A stretch of DNA of 64,000 nt, from positions 62,001-126,000 of the forward strand of contig NW_027142279.1 of the NCBI RefSeq assembly GCF_036365525.1. Reading direction: 5' to 3'. Source of the DNA: Heterodontus francisci. Taxonomy: Eukaryota. This document shows, piece after piece, positions 25,162-38,807 of this stretch (position 1 is its first letter; the number at the start of each line of letters is the position of its first letter). The notes beneath the pieces were generated by a model. It had not been told where the DNA came from, did no database searches, and saw only the letters and a list, made by a program, of their open reading frames with translations. Position numbers and translations under genes: made by a program.

Positions 25162-25884
25162 TTCTCCCAATCTGTCTCAGTCTCTTGATCCATGTTTCCT
25201 TTTTTTTCTCTCACTCGGTCTCTCGGTCTTTCTTGTTTTCTCTGTCGCTCTCTCGACCTTTCTTGATCCTCGTCTCCCTCCTCCTCTCTGCCACCCTCTC
25301 TGACCTCCTCTATGTCACCCTCTGTCCTCCTTTCTGTCCTCCTCTCTGTCCTCTTCTCTCTTTCCTCTCTCTGTCTCTGTCTCTCTGTCTCTGTCAGTTT
25401 TCCTCTCAATCTTGTTCTCTCCCTCTCTCACACATTCGGTCTCCCTCTCTTTGTCTCTCTCACTGTGTGTGTGTATATCCCTCTCTAATGTGATGAATGT
25501 CCTTCTCCTGTCCATGTGTATGAAGCCTGAGGGTTGTATGACCTCTGCCTCTTTCTGTTTTCCTATTAAATGTTTTACAGACCATTGCATATTCATGGTC
25601 CGAGAGCACCCTCTGTTAATCATATAGAGGAAGAAAACTCAGTGTCAGTGCAGTAAAACTCAAGTCGTTTTATAGTTAATTCTTCCTGATAGTTACAACC
25701 TCAGATCTGGTGTTATCCTTGTTAATTGTTCTTTACACATTCTCCACTATCTGTATATCTAATCTCTCACTCCCACTCTAACCCATCTCTTCGTGTTATC
25801 ATAAACACTTTCGCTCTGCAAAACGAAACAAGTTCGAGGCTCCGAGCAGTTTTATCCTCCACAGATTCTTCCTGCTGCCTTTGG

Positions 25885-25923
25885 TGTTGTTGTTGAACTG
25901 CTCCATCTCTCTGAGTCACTGTG
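25885..25923 (-). other. 23-RSS of V8 (CACAGTG-23-ACAACAACA, degenerate nonamer)
   Basis: Heptamer 25917-25923, nonamer 25885-25893. Confidence 0.85.
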
Positions 25924-26375
25924 ATCTCTCCAGGCACAGAAATACACGACCGAGTGATTCTCCCACAGGCTGGAGGACTCCTGGTTGAACTCGGAATTCC
26001 TCTGTCTCCCGGCGGTGAAACCATCCACCGTCCCCTCTGGATCCACATGGTTAGCAGTATTGGAATAAAACATCAACAGCGGCTCCTTCCCCAGGTATTG
26101 TCTGTACCAGCACATTCTATCAGTACTGGTGCCCTGCACGGTGCACCTCAGTTCCACTGCTTCTCCACGCAATCTGGAGACAGCGGCACGAATCTGGTGG
26201 ATTGTCTGTGAGTTCACATCTGGGAGAGAGATGGAGAGAGGAGGAGATCATTAAATAGGGAACTTCTTGGAATGAAAGGGAGATAGAGAGAGGAAAGGAA
26301 AGTTATTAACGATATATTTGTATTTCACACTCACTTACAATGAAACAGGATTATCAGACCCAGTAACTGATACAT
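25924..26375 (-). CDS. TRBV: TCR beta V segment V8 (family C, TRBV30-like): leader 26339-26375, V exon 25924-26219; open reading frame
   Basis: Leader MYQLLGLIILFH; VNSQTIHQIRAAVSRLRGEAVELRCTVQGTSTDRMCWYRQ...VVYFCAWR. Some atypical residues (QTP to QIR, FNL to FNQ). Confidence 0.8.
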
Positions 26376-31389: not shown

Positions 31390-31510
31390 CCCTTGCTCTC
31401 TCTCTGTCGCTCTCTGTCGCTCTCTCTCAGTCTGTCGATGTATTTCTCTGTCTCTGTCGCGCTTGCTATCTCTCTCTCTTTGCCTCTCTCTCCCTCTATC
31501 TTTCTATCTT

Positions 31511-31673
31511 NNNNNNNNNNNNNNNNNNNNNNNNNNNNNNNNNNNNNNNNNNNNNNNNNNNNNNNNNNNNNNNNNNNNNNNNNNNNNNNNNNNNNNNNNN
31601 NNNNNNNNNNNNNNNNNNNNNNNNNNNNNNNNNNNNNNNNNNNNNNNNNNNNNNNNNNNNNNNNNNNNNNNNN
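31511..31673. other. Assembly gap (N run)
   Basis: Run of N. Confidence 1.
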
Positions 31674-31865
31674 CTCTCTATCTATCTCTCTCTCCGTCTC
31701 TCTCACTTGCTCTCTATCTATCGCTCTCTATCTTTGTCACCCTCTCTCTCTCTCGCTCTGTCTCTCTCACACTGACTGGGTCTTCGATTGGAAATTCTGT
31801 CCCATTGATGACCACCTCCCTTTGTTCCCTCATTCAGGATTTGGAGTGGGCAGGAAGATCCCACG

Positions 31866-33972
31866 ATGCGGACTCTCTGCTTGTTCCTGTTGGTGCTGTT
31901 CTGGGTCCCCGAGTCAGATGCGGTTGCACTAAATGACAATGTCTTGGCTGGAATTGTCTCACAGTAAGTGTTCATCCTGCCCAGGCCTTTCACCATTCAC
32001 TGACAGGGTTAGGCTGTGAGAATGGCCCAGGTATGAGGCTCCGCTCTGTCAAAGTGATGAGGGGGAGCAGGGCAGAGTCCAGTTAAATTAAAATAACATG
32101 GAACCACAGAGAGGGGAAGGTGAGCAAGAAAGGACTCAGAGTGAGACATGTCACTTCATCAGTAATCTGACTCACTGACCCCACTCACTGACCCCACTTA
32201 CTGACCCCACTCACTGACCCCACTCACTGACCCCTCTCACTGAACCCACTCACTGACCGCACTCACTGACCCCGCTCACTGACCCCACTTACTGACCCCA
32301 CTCACTGACCCCTCTCACTGACCCCACTGACTGACCCCACTGACTGACCCCAATCACTGACCCCTCTCATTGACCCCTCTCACTGACCCCACTCACTGAC
32401 CACACTCACTGACCCCTCTCACTGACCCCACTCACTGTCCCCACGCACTGACCCCTCTCACTGACCCCACTAACTGACCCCACTCACTGACCCCGCTCAC
32501 TGACCTCGCTCACTGACCTCGCTCCTCTCCCCTCCCGCTCTCTCTCCCTGTTGCCCTGTGTCTATCTCTTTCTCTCTCTATGTCTTCCATTCTATTTATC
32601 TCTTGGTTTGTGTTGCTGTTAATCTCTCACTGTATTTCTCCTGTCACTTGTCCCTCTCCATGCTCGACGGCCTGTCTATCTCTCTCATCTCTGTCTCTAT
32701 TACTTTATCCTTTTTCAGTTTATCACTGCCTCTGTTCCCTCTCTCTGTCTCTATCTGTATCTGTCTCCATCTTGTTCTTCCTTTTTCTGTCTCTATCTGT
32801 TTCTATGTACTTGTCTCCAGAACTCTTCCTTTCCCTGGCTTTGTTTCTTCTCTCCATCTCTGTCTCTCCTGCTGTCTTCTACCCTCCCTCTATCACATTC
32901 TCTGTCTCCCTCCCTCCATCCATCTCTCCACCTCTTTGTTTCTCCCTTGCTCTTGTTCCAATCACTCTTTCCATCTCTGTTTCATTGGAATGAGTTCATT
33001 CGGTCCCGTCCTTTCCAATGTCGTAAATTAATGACCAAATTTATTGAAATGCCACAGCATACAAGACTACGGGCCAAGTGCTGGGAAATAGGATTAGAAT
33101 AGTTAGGTGCTTGATGGCTGGCACAGACACGATGGGCCGAAGGGCCTGTTTCTGTGCTGTGTAACTCTTTGACTCTCTGACTCAAACTCCCAGTTTCCCT
33201 CCTTCCATCATGAGGTATGGTATTAAATAGGCAGGTGACCATAATCCACATCATACTGACCTGGCACAAGGAGAATTTCATTCACAATTCCTACCTTGAC
33301 TCTCACTTTGTGTTTGTCCCTTTCAGATTCCGACAAGTGTCTGGCCACCAGCCCAGCAGTACGACTGGGGGAGGACAGTTCGCCTTCCTGATGGTGTTAA
33401 CTCCTCAACAATGCACCGGTGCCAATATCAATCAGAATGTACAATTCAGACCCTCTGATTCAGGAAGACCGGTTATTCGTGGCGGTGTGAATTACTTCCT
33501 GAACAGTCGATCAGTAAACTACATCGCAGTTTACCCCAACACAGGAAGTCGCTGCTCAGAGAATAAACTGTTACACTTCACTCAGGAGGATCAACGCTAT
33601 GGGCAGACTGACAGTGCAGCTCGGCTGCTTCAGAATAGCATCAATAACCAGGGGCTGCAGGTTGGCTGTGTCATTCTCTACACCACCTACACCCCCTGCA
33701 TCCAGAGCTGCTTCAGTGGCAATGAGAATTGTGACATCCTCGCCGCGTTAGGCCAGGCACCCTTTAGCCACCCATGGGCTGGCCCGCAGGTTCAGAAGTA
33801 TTTTGTCTTCAGTACATTGTACCGATACGACAATAATAGAAATAAGATCCCCACAGTTCGAAACAAGCTGGGACAAGTTACCCAGGCAGGCTTTCACATC
33901 AGAAAGTGTGATGGGACCAACAGCCAAATACAGTGTCAGGACTGCACCCACCCTGGGGGCTACTGTATCTAG
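31866..33972 (+). CDS. SNAD1: Secreted AID/APOBEC-like deaminase (SNAD family), ~247 aa; coding exons 31866-31963 and 33327-33972
   Basis: Signal exon MRTLCLFLLVLFWVPESDA-VALNDNVLAGIVS splices in phase 2 (CA|gtaagt...tttcag|A) to FRQVSG...QFAFL...QQC...NYIAVYP...RCSENKLL...CVILYTTYTPCIQSC...FVFSTLYRYD...IRKC...CQDC...C*. This matches the SNAD motif order. Subfamily number not verified. Confidence 0.82.
32175..32520. repeat. 13-bp minisatellite in the SNAD intron
   Basis: (cactgaccccact)n. Confidence 0.95.
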
Positions 33973-34094
33973 TAAACAGTCTCACTACAGGAGGCAATAG
34001 CAGATCAGAGAGTCCCAGGAAAACAGTGCAAATCATTCTATTACTCTAGAAATCTATCTACTTCCATTTTATTCTGTTAATAATGCAGCTTTCC

Positions 34095-34690
34095 CCAGAT
34101 CACTCTCTATAATAATCCCTCATTCTCCAGATCACTCTCTATAACAATCCCTCATTCTCCAGATCAATCTCTATAACAATCCCTCATTCCCCAGATCACT
34201 CTCTATAACAATCCCTCATTCTCCAGATCACTCTCTATAATAATCCCTCATTCCCCAGACAACTCTCTACAATAATCCCTCATTCCCCAGGTCACTCTCT
34301 ATAATAATCCCTCATTCTCCAGATCACTCTCTAAAATAATCCCTCATTCTCCAGATCACTCTCTATTAAAATCCCACATACTCCAGATCACTCCCTATAA
34401 TAATCCCTCATTCTCCTGATCACTCTCTATAAAAATCCCTCATTCTCCAGATCACTCTCTATAATAATCCCTCATTCTCCAGATCACTCTCTATAATAAT
34501 CCCTCATTCTCTGGATCACTCTCGATAATAATCCCTCATTCTCCAGATCACTCCCTATAATAATCCCTCATTCTCCAGATCTCTCTCTATAAAAATCCCT
34601 CATTCTCCAGATCACTCCCTATAATAATCCCTCATTGTCCAGGTCACTCTCTATAATAATGCTTCATTCTCCAGGTCACTCCCTACAATG
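34095..34690. repeat. 32-bp minisatellite downstream of the SNAD stop
   Basis: (tcactctctataataatccctcattctccaga)n. Confidence 0.95.
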
Positions 34691-37480: not shown

Positions 37481-38142
37481 GTATGCCGTCCAGTTGTGGT
37501 CACCACACTTTCGGAAGGATGAGTGTCCTTGACAGGCTGCAGAGGAGATTTACCAGAATGGTTCCAGGGATGTTACATGGTTAGATTGGAGAATATGGGG
37601 TGGTTTTCCTTTGAGCAAAGGCGATTGAGGGGAGATCGGATAGGAGATGTACACGATTGTGACAGTGTTAGATAAAGTAGACAGAGTAAACCTGTTCCCA
37701 TTAGTGGATGGTGCAAGGACTATTGGTCACAGGTTGATGATTTTGGACAATAGATACTGGGGTATTTGAGGAAGAACCTCTATACACAGTGAGTGGTAAC
37801 AACAGGGAATTCACTGCCTACCAGGGTGGTGGAAGTGGAGACAATGAATGATTTCAAAAGGAAATTGAATGGACACTTGAAGGGGATAATCTTGCTAGAC
37901 CGCAGGGATAGAGAGGTGGAATGGAATTGACTAGATTGCATGGACTCGATGGGCCGAATGGCCTCCTTCTGTACCATACTGGCTGTATGACTTTCTGGCT
38001 AACTGGCTGTAAAGTGTTTTCAAATGACATGGTGTTGCAAAGGTCACCAATAGAGATACACAGGGGCTCGTTGGTTTGCTGAGCTTTCCAGATGCTGCTG
38101 CTCACAGGTGGGTGTTTTAGGGGCAGGTTGGGAGGGTGGGGA

Positions 38143-38181
38143 TGTTTTTGTCTCACTCTGCTGCAGGGTTGTATCGCTGTG
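38143..38181 (-). other. 23-RSS of V9 (CACAGCG-23-ACAAAAACA)
   Basis: Heptamer 38175-38181, nonamer 38143-38151. Confidence 0.9.
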
Positions 38182-38807
38182 CCCAATCTTGCTGCACAGT
38201 AGTAGGTCGCAGTGTCTGTCGGCTGGGGGTCGCCCAGCTGCAGGGAGAATCGGTTGCTTGCAGAGTCATGTTGCACAGTGAACCGCTTCTCAAAGCCTGG
38301 CCCACAGCTGCCGTGCTCATTGCACATCCACTCTACTGCCTTCCCCTCCTGCCTGTACCAGTGCATGGTGTAGCTGCCCATGCTGGCTCCCTCCAAGCTG
38401 CAGCCGAGGGCGAGGGGCTTCCCCGGTCGAATAGAAGCCGCGGCTGGAGTCTGGACCACAGTGGGTGCAGACTGAACCCCTGGAACACATTCCATAAAAG
38501 AAAGTAATTCAGAATCATGGAAGGAAAATGGTAGCATAAATCATAAAATCTAACAGAATAGAAAGAGGCCGTTCTGCCCATCGTATCTGCGCTGGCTGTT
38601 TGAAAGAGCAATCGAGTTAGTCGCACTTGCCCCTGCTCCTACCCCATTGCCCTCCCAATTTCCCCGCTCCAAGCACTGATCCAATAGCCATTTGGGAGAT
38701 TACTATTGAATCTACTTCCTCCTGCTGAAGGGATAGCACTTACAAAAAATCCAATGTCCAAGCAATAAGATGACCAAGATTGAGATGTTTTTAGCTGAGA
38801 CTGCCAT
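38182..38807 (-). CDS. Antigen-receptor V segment V9, TCR-delta-like: leader 38744-38807, V exon 38182-38479; open
   Basis: Leader MAVSAKNISILVILLLGHWIF|WVQS; VVQTPAAASIRPGKPLALGCSLEGASMGSYTMHWYRQEGKAVEWM...GPGFEKRF...DSASNRFSLQL...DTATYYCAAR. Confidence 0.85.

What the first reader, a model, noticed from the sequence alone, without database searches (positions are those of the whole stretch)
33553..33711. Zinc site reads CxE...PCxxxC instead of HxE...PCxxC
Seen: the first zinc-ligand position is TGC (R-C-S-E, 33553-33561), two substitutions away from CAC, so a single base error is unlikely. The catalytic Glu and PCIQSC are retained. Known: AID/APOBEC/SNAD use HxE, whereas tetrameric free-nucleoside cytidine deaminases use CxE with three Cys ligands. 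Inference: this is either an active three-Cys variant with altered substrate or a pseudo-enzyme whose Cys forms a disulfide in the oxidising secretory pathway.
Basis: partly seen in the sequence, partly recalled or inferred. Interest (0 to 1): 0.75.

Follow-up and report, generated by a model that had tools for sequence, protein, structure and literature searches.

The report
Three-cysteine zinc site, shark secreted deaminase
A horn-shark gene for a secreted AID/APOBEC-like deaminase has a cysteine where this enzyme group normally has its zinc-binding histidine, and this cysteine is conserved in a subfamily shared by sharks, primitive bony fishes, coelacanth and salamanders.

Summary
Codon 33553-33555 is TGC (C109), E111 is at 33559-33561 and PCIQSC is at 33694-33711. 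They lie in exon 2 of an intact two-exon Heterodontus francisci gene (247 aa, signal peptide, Pfam SNAD1 at 57.6 bits). Contigs of one run show the gene spliced and deeply covered, with no other letter at the Cys codon.

The interpretation needs correcting in two ways.
- PCx3C is the SNAD1 norm, not a deviation. It occurs in 31 of 31 aligned relatives and is printed as CVxxC for fish SNAD1.
- CxE is not private to this gene. 30 of 32 aligned relatives carry it: 7 elasmobranch species, bowfin, gar, sturgeons, coelacanth and salamanders. The sample is biased because it was gathered with the shark query.

The one HxE relative recovered scores 162 bits on Pfam SNAD1, against 22-58 bits for the eleven CxE proteins scored singly. 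A profile alignment places its His on C109. The AlphaFold model (pLDDT 86) is closest to AID/APOBEC structures, not to CDA.

Glu, Pro-Cys, the second Cys and the loop-7 aromatic are invariant across the CxE rows. An active Cys3-zinc site is therefore likelier than a pseudo-enzyme, but no activity is known for any SNAD. [quoted passage not shown] I rate this a new variant of a known kind, of moderate interest.

The parts
31866..31963 (+). Coding exon 1: ATG, signal peptide (residues 1-19, MRTLC...ESDA) and residues 20-32, plus the first two bases of codon 33. GT donor at 31964.
   Evidence: tblastn of P0001 residues 1-33 at 31866-31964, 100%; sequence read; GT..AG joint 31963->33327 in 3 contigs of run X2 and 1 of X4. 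Signal peptide judged by eye; no predictor was run.
31964..33326 (+). Intron (1363 nt, GT..AG). It holds a 13-nt tandem array (32170-32518) and a dispersed repeat (about 33016-33243).
   Evidence: Joint; word depth is zero in bins 32028-32103 and 33244-33319 in X2 while both exons are deep; tandem repeat.
33327..33972 (+). Coding exon 2: last base of codon 33, residues 34-247 (whole deaminase domain) and stop TAG at 33970-33972.
   Evidence: Translation; Pfam SNAD1 57.6 bits; 100% identity to P0001.
33553..33561 (+). C109-S110-E111: first zinc ligand (Cys in place of His) and catalytic Glu, at the start of helix 2.
   Evidence: C in 30 of 32 and E in 32 of 32 aligned relatives; aligned to H-S-E of P0023; model helix 110-115 follows strand 98-101.
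33694..33711 (+). P156-C157-I-Q-S-C161: second and third zinc ligands, right after strand 3.
   Evidence: P, C and C in 31 of 31 rows that have the region; model strand 147-154 precedes it.
33820..33822 (+). Y198: aromatic residue at the start of loop 7 (after strand 4), the position that limits the pocket to a pyrimidine in AADs.
   Evidence: Y, F or W in 30 of 30 CxE rows; role taken from PMC5889660 section 8. The equivalence to APOBEC3A Y130 is inferred from position in the model, not from a residue-level superposition.
33907..33966 (+). C-terminal four-cysteine cluster C227, C236-x-x-C239, C246 (SNAD1/2 hallmark; presumed two disulfides).
   Evidence: C227 and C236 in 32 of 32, C239 and C246 in 31 of 32 rows; strands 222-228 and 235-238 in the model; feature described in PMC5889660 section 7.
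33412..33414 (+). [quoted passage not shown] Together with C147 (33667-33669) it is conserved in both CxE and HxE types; a candidate disulfide pair.
   Evidence: C62 and C147 in 31 of 32 rows.
34091..34689 (+). 32-nt minisatellite, 18.7 copies, starting 119 nt after the stop codon; probably in or just behind the 3' UTR.
   Evidence: X2 coverage continues to the end of the laid stretch at 34050.

Best explanation
The Cys is the normal, conserved first zinc ligand of an old subgroup of the SNAD1 family (secreted AID/APOBEC-like deaminases). This subgroup uses C-x-E ... P-C-x3-C instead of H-x-E ... P-C-V-x-x-C.

The window holds one intact, spliced, strongly expressed horn-shark member: signal peptide plus one deaminase domain.

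Shown here:
- The residue is positionally homologous to the His of an HxE-type SNAD1.
- It is fixed from elasmobranchs to salamanders.
- The other active-site features are kept: catalytic Glu, Pro-Cys, second Cys and loop-7 aromatic.
- The predicted fold is of the AID/APOBEC type.

Inferred: C109, C157 and C161 hold one zinc ion through three thiolates. A zinc-bound water is activated by E111 and attacks C4 of a cytosine, as in other zinc deaminases. The protein acts after secretion; nurse-shark SNAD1 proteins were found in plasma.

Losing the imidazole removes the pi-stacking contact that the His makes with the target base in APOBEC3A. The pocket, and possibly the substrate or the redox sensitivity, should therefore differ from classical AADs.
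For: - Gene model and identity.
- Expression and splicing, with no variant at the Cys codon.
- CxE in 30 of 32 rows of alignment A2, and E111 in 32 of 32. Four further cluster members not in A2 (P0032, P0033, P0016, P0034) read as CxE by eye.
- Named species: 12 elasmobranch proteins from 7 species, and 14 proteins from 10 bony-vertebrate species.
- Invariant columns in the 30 CxE rows are C109, E111, L115, C147, P156, C157, C161, C227 and C236. With the HxE row P0023 added (31 rows), the most conserved 9-residue windows centre on 149-155.
- Aromatic at 198 in 30 of 30 rows, P103 in 26 of 30, D201 in 24 of 30.
- A profile of the 30 CxE rows against the HxE protein P0023: probability 98.6, E 1.1e-15, with CSE aligned on HSE.
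- No conserved His elsewhere could replace it.
- Model pLDDT 86.1, pTM 0.86. Helix 207-219 lies between strands 189-196 and 222-228.
- Foldseek's best listed matches are all APOBEC3 or AID chains. The Foldseek-independent search ranks AID Z 7.7, APOBEC3G 7.7, APOBEC3H 7.5 and APOBEC1 7.4 first, followed mostly by other deaminase-fold proteins down to rank 33.
- Nurse-shark SNAD1 proteins were detected in plasma by LC-MS/MS (PMC9207270, passages read).
Against: - No SNAD of any type has a demonstrated activity (PMC8201067 passage: catalytic activity unknown).
[quoted passage not shown] By that rule, a Cys form would count as inactive.
- Three thiolates in an oxidising extracellular setting are prone to oxidation and zinc loss.
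DSSP calls residues 155-164 coil, so helix 3 does not start at the first Cys as in textbook deaminases.
- Structural Z scores are below 8, the range the tool itself calls middling.
- The 30-of-32 figure comes from relatives found with the shark query. It says nothing about how common CxE is in SNAD1 at large. The large fish clusters seen in the Atlas (133, 64 and 85 members) were not sampled.
Confidence: 0.65

Rival explanations
1. Pseudo-enzyme: the protein is secreted and folded but does not catalyse deamination. C109 and the PCx3C cysteines form disulfides or a purely structural metal site. The protein would act as a binder or decoy, for example for nucleic acids or pathogen factors.
For: - Secretory route and 10 cysteines in the mature protein.
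- No SNAD activity is known (PMC8201067 passage).
Against: - E111, which has no structural role in a disulfide scheme, is present in 32 of 32 rows. P156, C157 and C161 are in 31 of 31, and the pocket aromatic in 30 of 30, across a divergence as deep as shark versus salamander.
- Inactive AADs are described as losing such residues.
- Cysteine arithmetic fits a zinc site. In most rows, 10 Cys = 3 ligands + 4 in the C-terminal cluster + C62/C147 + one variable Cys (C168, present in only 12 of 32 rows).
Confidence: 0.2
2. Active Cys3 enzyme with a non-nucleic-acid substrate: like the three-Cys tetrameric cytidine deaminases and blasticidin-S deaminase, it would deaminate free nucleosides, nucleotides or another small amidine in plasma rather than polynucleotides.
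For: - The same ligand set as the CDD/CDA division (PMC3239186 passage: that division most commonly has CxE).
- Loss of the His that stacks on the target base in APOBEC3A (PMC5889660 section 8).
Against: - The fold is of the helix-4 (AID/APOBEC) type, and no CDA-type chain is in the best 50 structural matches.
- The loop-7 aromatic and the long variable loops typical of polynucleotide-binding AADs are kept (PMC5889660 sections 8-10).
- Lineage-specific expansion (three paralogues in this shark) fits a conflict protein rather than a metabolic one.
Confidence: 0.12
3. Artefact or private mutation: the TGC is an assembly or sequencing error, or a recent change in a decaying copy.
For: None found. 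The N run upstream of exon 1 shows only that the assembly is imperfect nearby.
Against: - Two substitutions would be needed to reach a His codon.
- No other letter is listed at the codon in deep contigs of run X2.
- The same Cys occurs in two paralogues and in all 12 named elasmobranch proteins.
- The reading frame is open and spliced.
Confidence: 0.01

Closest known systems
[quoted passage not shown] 2018, PMC5889660; fish members in Majewska et al. 2024, PMC11004436)
   Same: - Pfam match above the cut-off.
- N-terminal signal peptide.
[quoted passage not shown]
- Cx3C spacing of the second zinc motif.
- C-terminal cluster C...CxxC...C on extra strands.
- Lineage-specific paralogues.
   Different: - The first zinc ligand is Cys, not His.
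- The residue after the first Cys of PCx3C is T, L or I, never the V printed for fish SNAD1.
- The eleven CxE proteins scored singly reach only 22-58 bits on the Pfam model (one, Scleropages P0021, is below the 25-bit cut-off), against 162 bits for the HxE-type P0023. They form a divergent subgroup.
Nurse-shark plasma SNAD1 proteins (contigs Seq27503 and Seq44752; Bakke et al. 2022, PMC9207270)
   Same: Elasmobranch SNAD1-domain proteins. They were found as circulating plasma proteins, which supports secretion of this kind of protein.
   Different: Their sequences are in supplements that I could not see, so orthology to this gene and their residue at the ligand position were not checked. That paper's text does not discuss the zinc site (passages read).
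Classical AID/APOBEC deaminases (AID 5w0r, APOBEC3G 6p3x, APOBEC3H 5w3v, APOBEC1 6x91)
   Same: - Best structural matches: Z 7.4-7.7, 139-143 residues aligned; Foldseek probability 0.9-0.99.
- Helix 4 precedes strand 5.
- Glu, Pro-Cys, the second Cys and the loop-7 aromatic are kept.
   Different: - Intracellular enzymes with HxE.
- No helical insert, no C-terminal disulfide hairpin, no signal peptide.
- Sequence similarity is too low for HMMER to detect against PDB.
Tetrameric cytidine deaminase and blasticidin-S deaminase (CDD/CDA-like, C-terminal hairpin division)
   Same: Cys-x-Glu plus two Cys: three thiolate ligands to the catalytic zinc. The CxE signature of this division comes from a PMC3239186 passage; the structures are recalled.
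   Different: Strands 4 and 5 form a hairpin with no helix between them. In the model, helix 207-219 lies between strands 189-196 and 222-228. No such chain is among the 50 best structural matches. These enzymes act on free nucleosides.

Membership tests
SNAD1 (PF18744) | Match to the Pfam model above its gathering score | tested here: met
   57.6 bits for exon 2 and 58.5 bits for P0001, against a cut-off of 25. This is much weaker than the 162 bits of the HxE-type P0023.
SNAD1 (PF18744) | N-terminal signal peptide | tested here: inconclusive
   Exon 1 encodes MR, then a hydrophobic run, then S-D-A, which reads as a signal peptide by eye. The model has a low-confidence helix at 2-12. No signal-peptide predictor was available.
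SNAD1 (PF18744) | [quoted passage not shown] | tested here: met
   The model has strand 52-57, helices 59-63, 67-69 and 88-91, then strand 98-101.
SNAD1 (PF18744) | Four-cysteine cluster: end of strand 5, CxxC in strand 6, last Cys in strand 7 | tested here: met
   C227 ends strand 222-228, C236-x-x-C239 lies on strand 235-238, and C246 follows. These are conserved in 31-32 of 32 rows. DSSP did not call strand 7 as a strand.
SNAD1 (PF18744) | HxE first zinc motif, as printed for fish SNAD1 (PMC11004436 section 19) | tested here: not met
   The motif is C109-S-E111. The wider superfamily definition HxE/CxE/DxE (PMC5889660 introduction) is met.
AID/APOBEC-like clade, helix-4 division of the deaminase fold | Helix 4 before the last core strand, so that strands 4 and 5 are parallel | tested here: met
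   Strand 189-196, helix 207-219, strand 222-228 in the model. The top structural matches are AID and APOBEC chains.
AID/APOBEC-like clade, helix-4 division of the deaminase fold | Active-site His 'absolutely conserved in active AADs' (PMC5889660 section 8); HxE typifies the division (PMC3239186) | tested here: not met
   Cys in this protein and in 30 of 32 aligned relatives.
AID/APOBEC-like clade, helix-4 division of the deaminase fold | Aromatic residue in loop 7 limiting the pocket to pyrimidines | tested here: met
   Y, F or W at position 198 in 30 of 30 rows. Equivalence to APOBEC3A Y130 is by position in the model only.
AID/APOBEC-like clade, helix-4 division of the deaminase fold | Zinc binding and cytosine deamination | not testable with these tools
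   Needs protein chemistry. Model coordinates were not exposed, so even the ligand geometry was not measured.
CDD/CDA-like three-Cys cytidine deaminases | C-terminal beta-hairpin (strands 4 and 5 adjacent, antiparallel) | tested here: not met
   A helix lies between strands 4 and 5. No CDA-type chain is in the best 50 of 48,161 representatives.

The most novel reading that the evidence does not exclude
The CxE proteins are a distinct, ancient, gnathostome-wide subfamily of secreted AID/APOBEC-like enzymes that are catalytically active with an all-thiolate zinc site. That would overturn the printed rule that active AADs always keep the His. The thiolate-rich site would also make the enzyme redox-gated: silent or zinc-free in oxidising plasma, and switched on only in a reducing compartment of a target cell or parasite. 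This would be a built-in safety catch for a circulating mutator.
Probability: 0.2. Interest if true: 0.7.

Novelty: new variant of a known kind. Interest (0 to 1): 0.48.

Why it matters
AID/APOBEC enzymes are the vertebrate mutators of immunity and the parents of cytosine base editors. Their zinc site is taught as His-Cys-Cys, and the family's main survey says the His is absolutely conserved in active members.

A whole branch of the secreted relatives has kept Cys-Cys-Cys, with every other catalytic residue intact, since before sharks and bony vertebrates split. This bears on three points:
- Either that rule is too narrow, or this branch has a non-catalytic job.
- It gives a natural H-to-C 'experiment' for how the first ligand tunes zinc chemistry and base stacking in this fold.
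- It suggests that published SNAD1 datasets mix two site types. The coelacanth 'exception' would then be a member of this branch rather than a defective sequence.

The gene itself is ordinary in other respects: annotated, intact, and of a family already known in sharks.

Tried and rejected
- Sequence searches of PDB with exon 2 and with the family profile found no deaminase, only chance-level hits (pilin, ribosomal L3, NEDD8 E1). The link to AID/APOBEC rests on Pfam and on fold.
- The word-indexed homologue search with alignment A1 and with the sucker protein P0014 did not reach the HxE-type fish SNAD1s. The single all-against-all search reached only one, P0023. I therefore could not build a tree with enough HxE rows to say which state is ancestral. 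The tree is rooted on that one long branch and is used only for grouping.
- The Atlas gives cluster names only, no sequences.
- Pairwise BLASTP of P0001 against P0023 placed a gap across the motif and did not align CSE with HSE. MAFFT and the non-circular profile alignment do. One search is circular because P0023 is in A2, and I do not use it.
- I considered whether K113 (22 of 31 rows) plays the charge-balancing part that an Arg next to the Glu plays in three-Cys cytidine deaminases. That role is recalled, not tested, and I make no claim from it.
- I considered a replacement His ligand elsewhere. No His column is conserved.
They may already show the Cys in some SNAD1 rows. My statement that it is not described rests on text searches only: (SNAD + CxE + deaminase gave 1 paper, a generic sentence only; CxE + APOBEC + zinc gave 6 papers, none on SNAD sites by title or abstract), and the passages read.
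Searches were made with exon 2 alone. The full-length protein used for alignment, folding and the Atlas is the database record P0001 that one search returned.
Full report
WHAT IS THERE

The window is horn-shark DNA. The exon-2 translation is 100% identical to an NCBI protein of Heterodontus francisci, P0001, 247 aa.

The finding lies in exon 2 of a two-exon gene on the + strand.
- Exon 1 runs from 31866 to 31963: ATG, a hydrophobic leader ending S-D-A, then 13 more residues.
- A GT..AG intron runs from 31964 to 33326.
- Exon 2 runs from 33327 to 33972, with TAG at 33970-33972.

Exon 2 alone was used for the first searches. The full-length sequence used later is the database record returned.

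THE OBSERVATION

By hand, in the frame:
- CGC TGC TCA GAG is R108-C109-S110-E111, with TGC at 33553-33555.
- CCC TGC ATC CAG AGC TGC is P156-C157-I-Q-S-C161, at 33694-33711.
- TGC is two changes away from either His codon.

Exon 2 matches Pfam SNAD1 (PF18744) at E 2.2e-15, 57.6 bits against a cut-off of 25.

READS

Four coded runs were laid on 31800-34050. All are contigs, and their RNA status is a guess by the tool.
- Run X2 covers both exons at word depths of about 1e5 to 4e5, and has zero depth in intron bins 32028-32103 and 33244-33319.
- Three X2 contigs and one X4 contig carry the joint 31963->33327 (GT..AG). A spliced form therefore exists and is abundant in one run.
- X1 and X3, from the same sample, show nothing on the exons.
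- No other letter is listed for X2 between 33130 and 33923, so the Cys codon stands.

Caveats: contigs drop rare variants, and at 90% likeness paralogues may lie there too.

IS THE CYS AT THE HIS POSITION?

The all-against-all search returned 21 representatives at E <= 0.001, and the word-indexed searches added more.

In the 32-row alignment A2:

| Column | Count |
|---|---|
| C109 | C in 30, H in 1 (P0023), S in 1 (P0020, a truncated Callorhinchus model that lacks the PCx3C block) |
| E111 | 32 of 32 |
| P156, C157, C161 | 31 of 31 rows that have the region |

Four more cluster members not in A2 (P0032, P0033, P0016, P0034) read as CxE by eye.

A profile built from the 30 CxE rows only (A3) aligns to the HxE protein P0023 with probability 98.6 and E 1.1e-15. 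It puts C-S-E on H-S-E, followed by the shared x-x-L-L. Pairwise BLASTP failed to align that stretch. One search is circular and I do not use it.

No His column is conserved anywhere, so there is no substitute ligand.

WHO HAS IT?

- Twelve elasmobranch proteins from seven species: Heterodontus (3), Pristiophorus, Stegostoma, Mustelus (2), Heptranchias (2), Hemiscyllium (2) and Scyliorhinus.
- Fourteen proteins from ten bony vertebrates: Amia, Lepisosteus, Acipenser ruthenus, A. sinensis, Huso, Xyrauchen, Scleropages, Latimeria, Pleurodeles and Ambystoma.
- All of these are CxE.

The sample is biased. It is what a shark CxE query could reach, so 30 of 32 is not the frequency in SNAD1 at large.

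The one HxE protein, P0023, scores 162 bits on Pfam SNAD1. The ten CxE proteins tested score 22-54 bits, and P0001 scores 58.5 bits. P0023 also has P-C-V-x-x-C, while none of the 30 CxE rows has V there (T 11, L 9, I 6, S 2, Q 1, E 1).

PMC11004436 (section 19, read in full) says that almost all of its 38 fish SNAD1s have the His-Cys-Cys motif with CVxxC, 'except XP_042609327.1 and XP_014353512.1'. The second of these is P0033 of Latimeria, which reads C-S-E and P-C-T-G-K-C.

So the core Pfam and teleost type appears to be HxE + CVxxC. The shark gene belongs to a second, divergent type, CxE + C[TLI]xxC, and a published analysis met this type once and set it aside as an exception. That last link is my inference. 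The paper does not say why the sequence was an exception, and its supplementary figure was not available.

FOLD

AlphaFold2 on alignment A2 gives mean pLDDT 86.1 and pTM 0.86.
- The order is helix 24-38, strand 52-57, short helices, strand 98-101, helix 110-115, helix 130-141, strand 147-154, strand 189-196, helix 207-219, strand 222-228, strand 235-238.
- C109 sits just before helix 2, and P156-C157 sit just after strand 3, as the superfamily definition requires (PMC5889660 introduction).
- A helix lies between strands 4 and 5. This is the helix-4 division, not the CDA-type hairpin.

Foldseek against PDB lists only APOBEC3 and AID chains among its best matches (probability about 0.9-0.99, E from 1e-3, TM 0.27-0.44).

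The Foldseek-independent search of 48,161 representatives ranks AID 5w0r (Z 7.7, 143 aligned), APOBEC3G 6p3x (7.7), APOBEC3H 5w3v (7.5) and APOBEC1 6x91 (7.4) first. RibD, Rib2, ADAT2/3, FdhD, dCMP deaminases and TadA follow. No CDA or blasticidin-S deaminase chain is in the 50 shown.

The Z values are below 8, which the tool calls middling. The agreement of two search methods with Pfam is what carries the assignment.

Residues 155-164 are coil in the model.

ACTIVE OR DEAD?

Across the 30 CxE rows the invariant columns are C109, E111, L115, C147, P156, C157, C161, C227 and C236. With the HxE row P0023 added (31 rows), the most conserved 9-residue windows centre on 149-155, that is, strand 3 running into P-C.

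The aromatic after strand 4 (position 198) is Y, F or W in 30 of 30 rows. P103 is present in 26 of 30 and position 104 is D or N in 17 of 30. These fit the loop-3 and loop-7 contacts that PMC5889660 section 8 lists for cytosine-specific AADs. The residue equivalences are positional inference.

A Glu with no structural role, kept in every row since before the shark and bony-vertebrate split, while the loops vary and paralogues multiply (three in this shark), is what one expects of a working catalytic site.

Cysteine counts also fit. Most rows have 10 Cys in the mature part: three ligands, four in the C-terminal cluster, C62 and C147, and one variable Cys.

Against this:
- No SNAD has a shown activity (PMC8201067 passage).
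- PMC3239186 says the helix-4 division is typified by HxE.
- An all-thiolate zinc site outside the cell is exposed to oxidation.

I put an active Cys3 site at about 0.65, a pseudo-enzyme at 0.2, and an active enzyme with a small-molecule substrate at about 0.12.

WHAT IS KNOWN, WHAT IS NEW

Known:
- The SNAD1 family.
- Its presence in sharks, as plasma proteins (PMC9207270).
- The Cx3C spacing (PMC11004436).
- This gene as an annotated 'uncharacterized protein'.

Not found in searchable text: any statement that SNAD or other AID/APOBEC-like proteins use CxE. The searches were made, plus find-in-paper. Figures and supplements may show it.

I rate it a new variant of a known kind. The subfamily-wide pattern keeps it moderately interesting.

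EARLIER NOTES OF THIS SCAN

Searches show that the same gene, and a copy on another piece of this genome, were already noted as a SNAD among T-cell-receptor V segments. That agrees with what I see, but it is another finding.

Noticed in passing
window 25855-26217 (-) and 38140-38480 (-): Open frames with Ig V-set domains (Pfam PF07686, 37.5 and 42.6 bits) lie about 5.6 kb upstream and 4.2 kb downstream of the deaminase gene, on the opposite strand. The SNAD1 gene therefore sits inside an antigen-receptor V-segment array. Already noted by the scan (s1-873555, s1-873648).
   Followed up: partly
window 31924: In run X2, nearly all depth (171,824 of 174,914) reads C instead of T. This changes residue 20 (the first residue after the presumed signal cleavage) from Val to Ala. 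It is an allele or a near-identical second copy; one search lists P0001 on 2 contigs.
   Followed up: no
window 34091-34689: A 32-nt minisatellite, 18.7 copies at 90% match, begins 119 nt after the stop codon. X2 coverage is still deep at 34050, so the repeat may be in the 3' UTR.
   Followed up: no
window 32170-32518 and about 33016-33243 (intron): A 13-nt tandem array (26.8 copies) lies in the intron, along with a dispersed repeat that is very deeply covered in all four runs with many variant letters. The repeat is presumably a transcribed interspersed element unrelated to the gene.
   Followed up: no
window about 31510-31673: A run of N between TC-rich simple repeats lies about 200-350 nt upstream of the start codon, so part of the promoter region is not assembled. 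Left untouched.
   Followed up: no
P0014 and P0043 (Xyrauchen texanus) in the tree: The two proteins of this teleost sit inside the sturgeon group on short branches (76% identity to Acipenser ruthenus P0044). That does not fit the species tree. Contamination, mislabelling or transfer are possible causes.
   Followed up: no
P0011, P0012, P0014, P0043-P0046 (bowfin, coelacanth, sucker, sturgeons, gar): These CxE members carry a C-terminal extension of about 110-130 residues made of repeated CxxC-type cysteine motifs. The shark and salamander proteins lack it.
   Followed up: no
P0022 (bacterial, 3617 aa, Echinicola): A giant bacterial 'MBG domain' protein matched query residues 118-170 in five stretches at E 1.6e-4. 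This may be chance or a repeat with a similar Cys pattern.
   Followed up: no
P0020 (Callorhinchus milii): The only holocephalan relative recovered has Ser-Ala-Glu at the motif and lacks the PCx3C block in the gene model. It is either a decayed copy or a faulty model.
   Followed up: no
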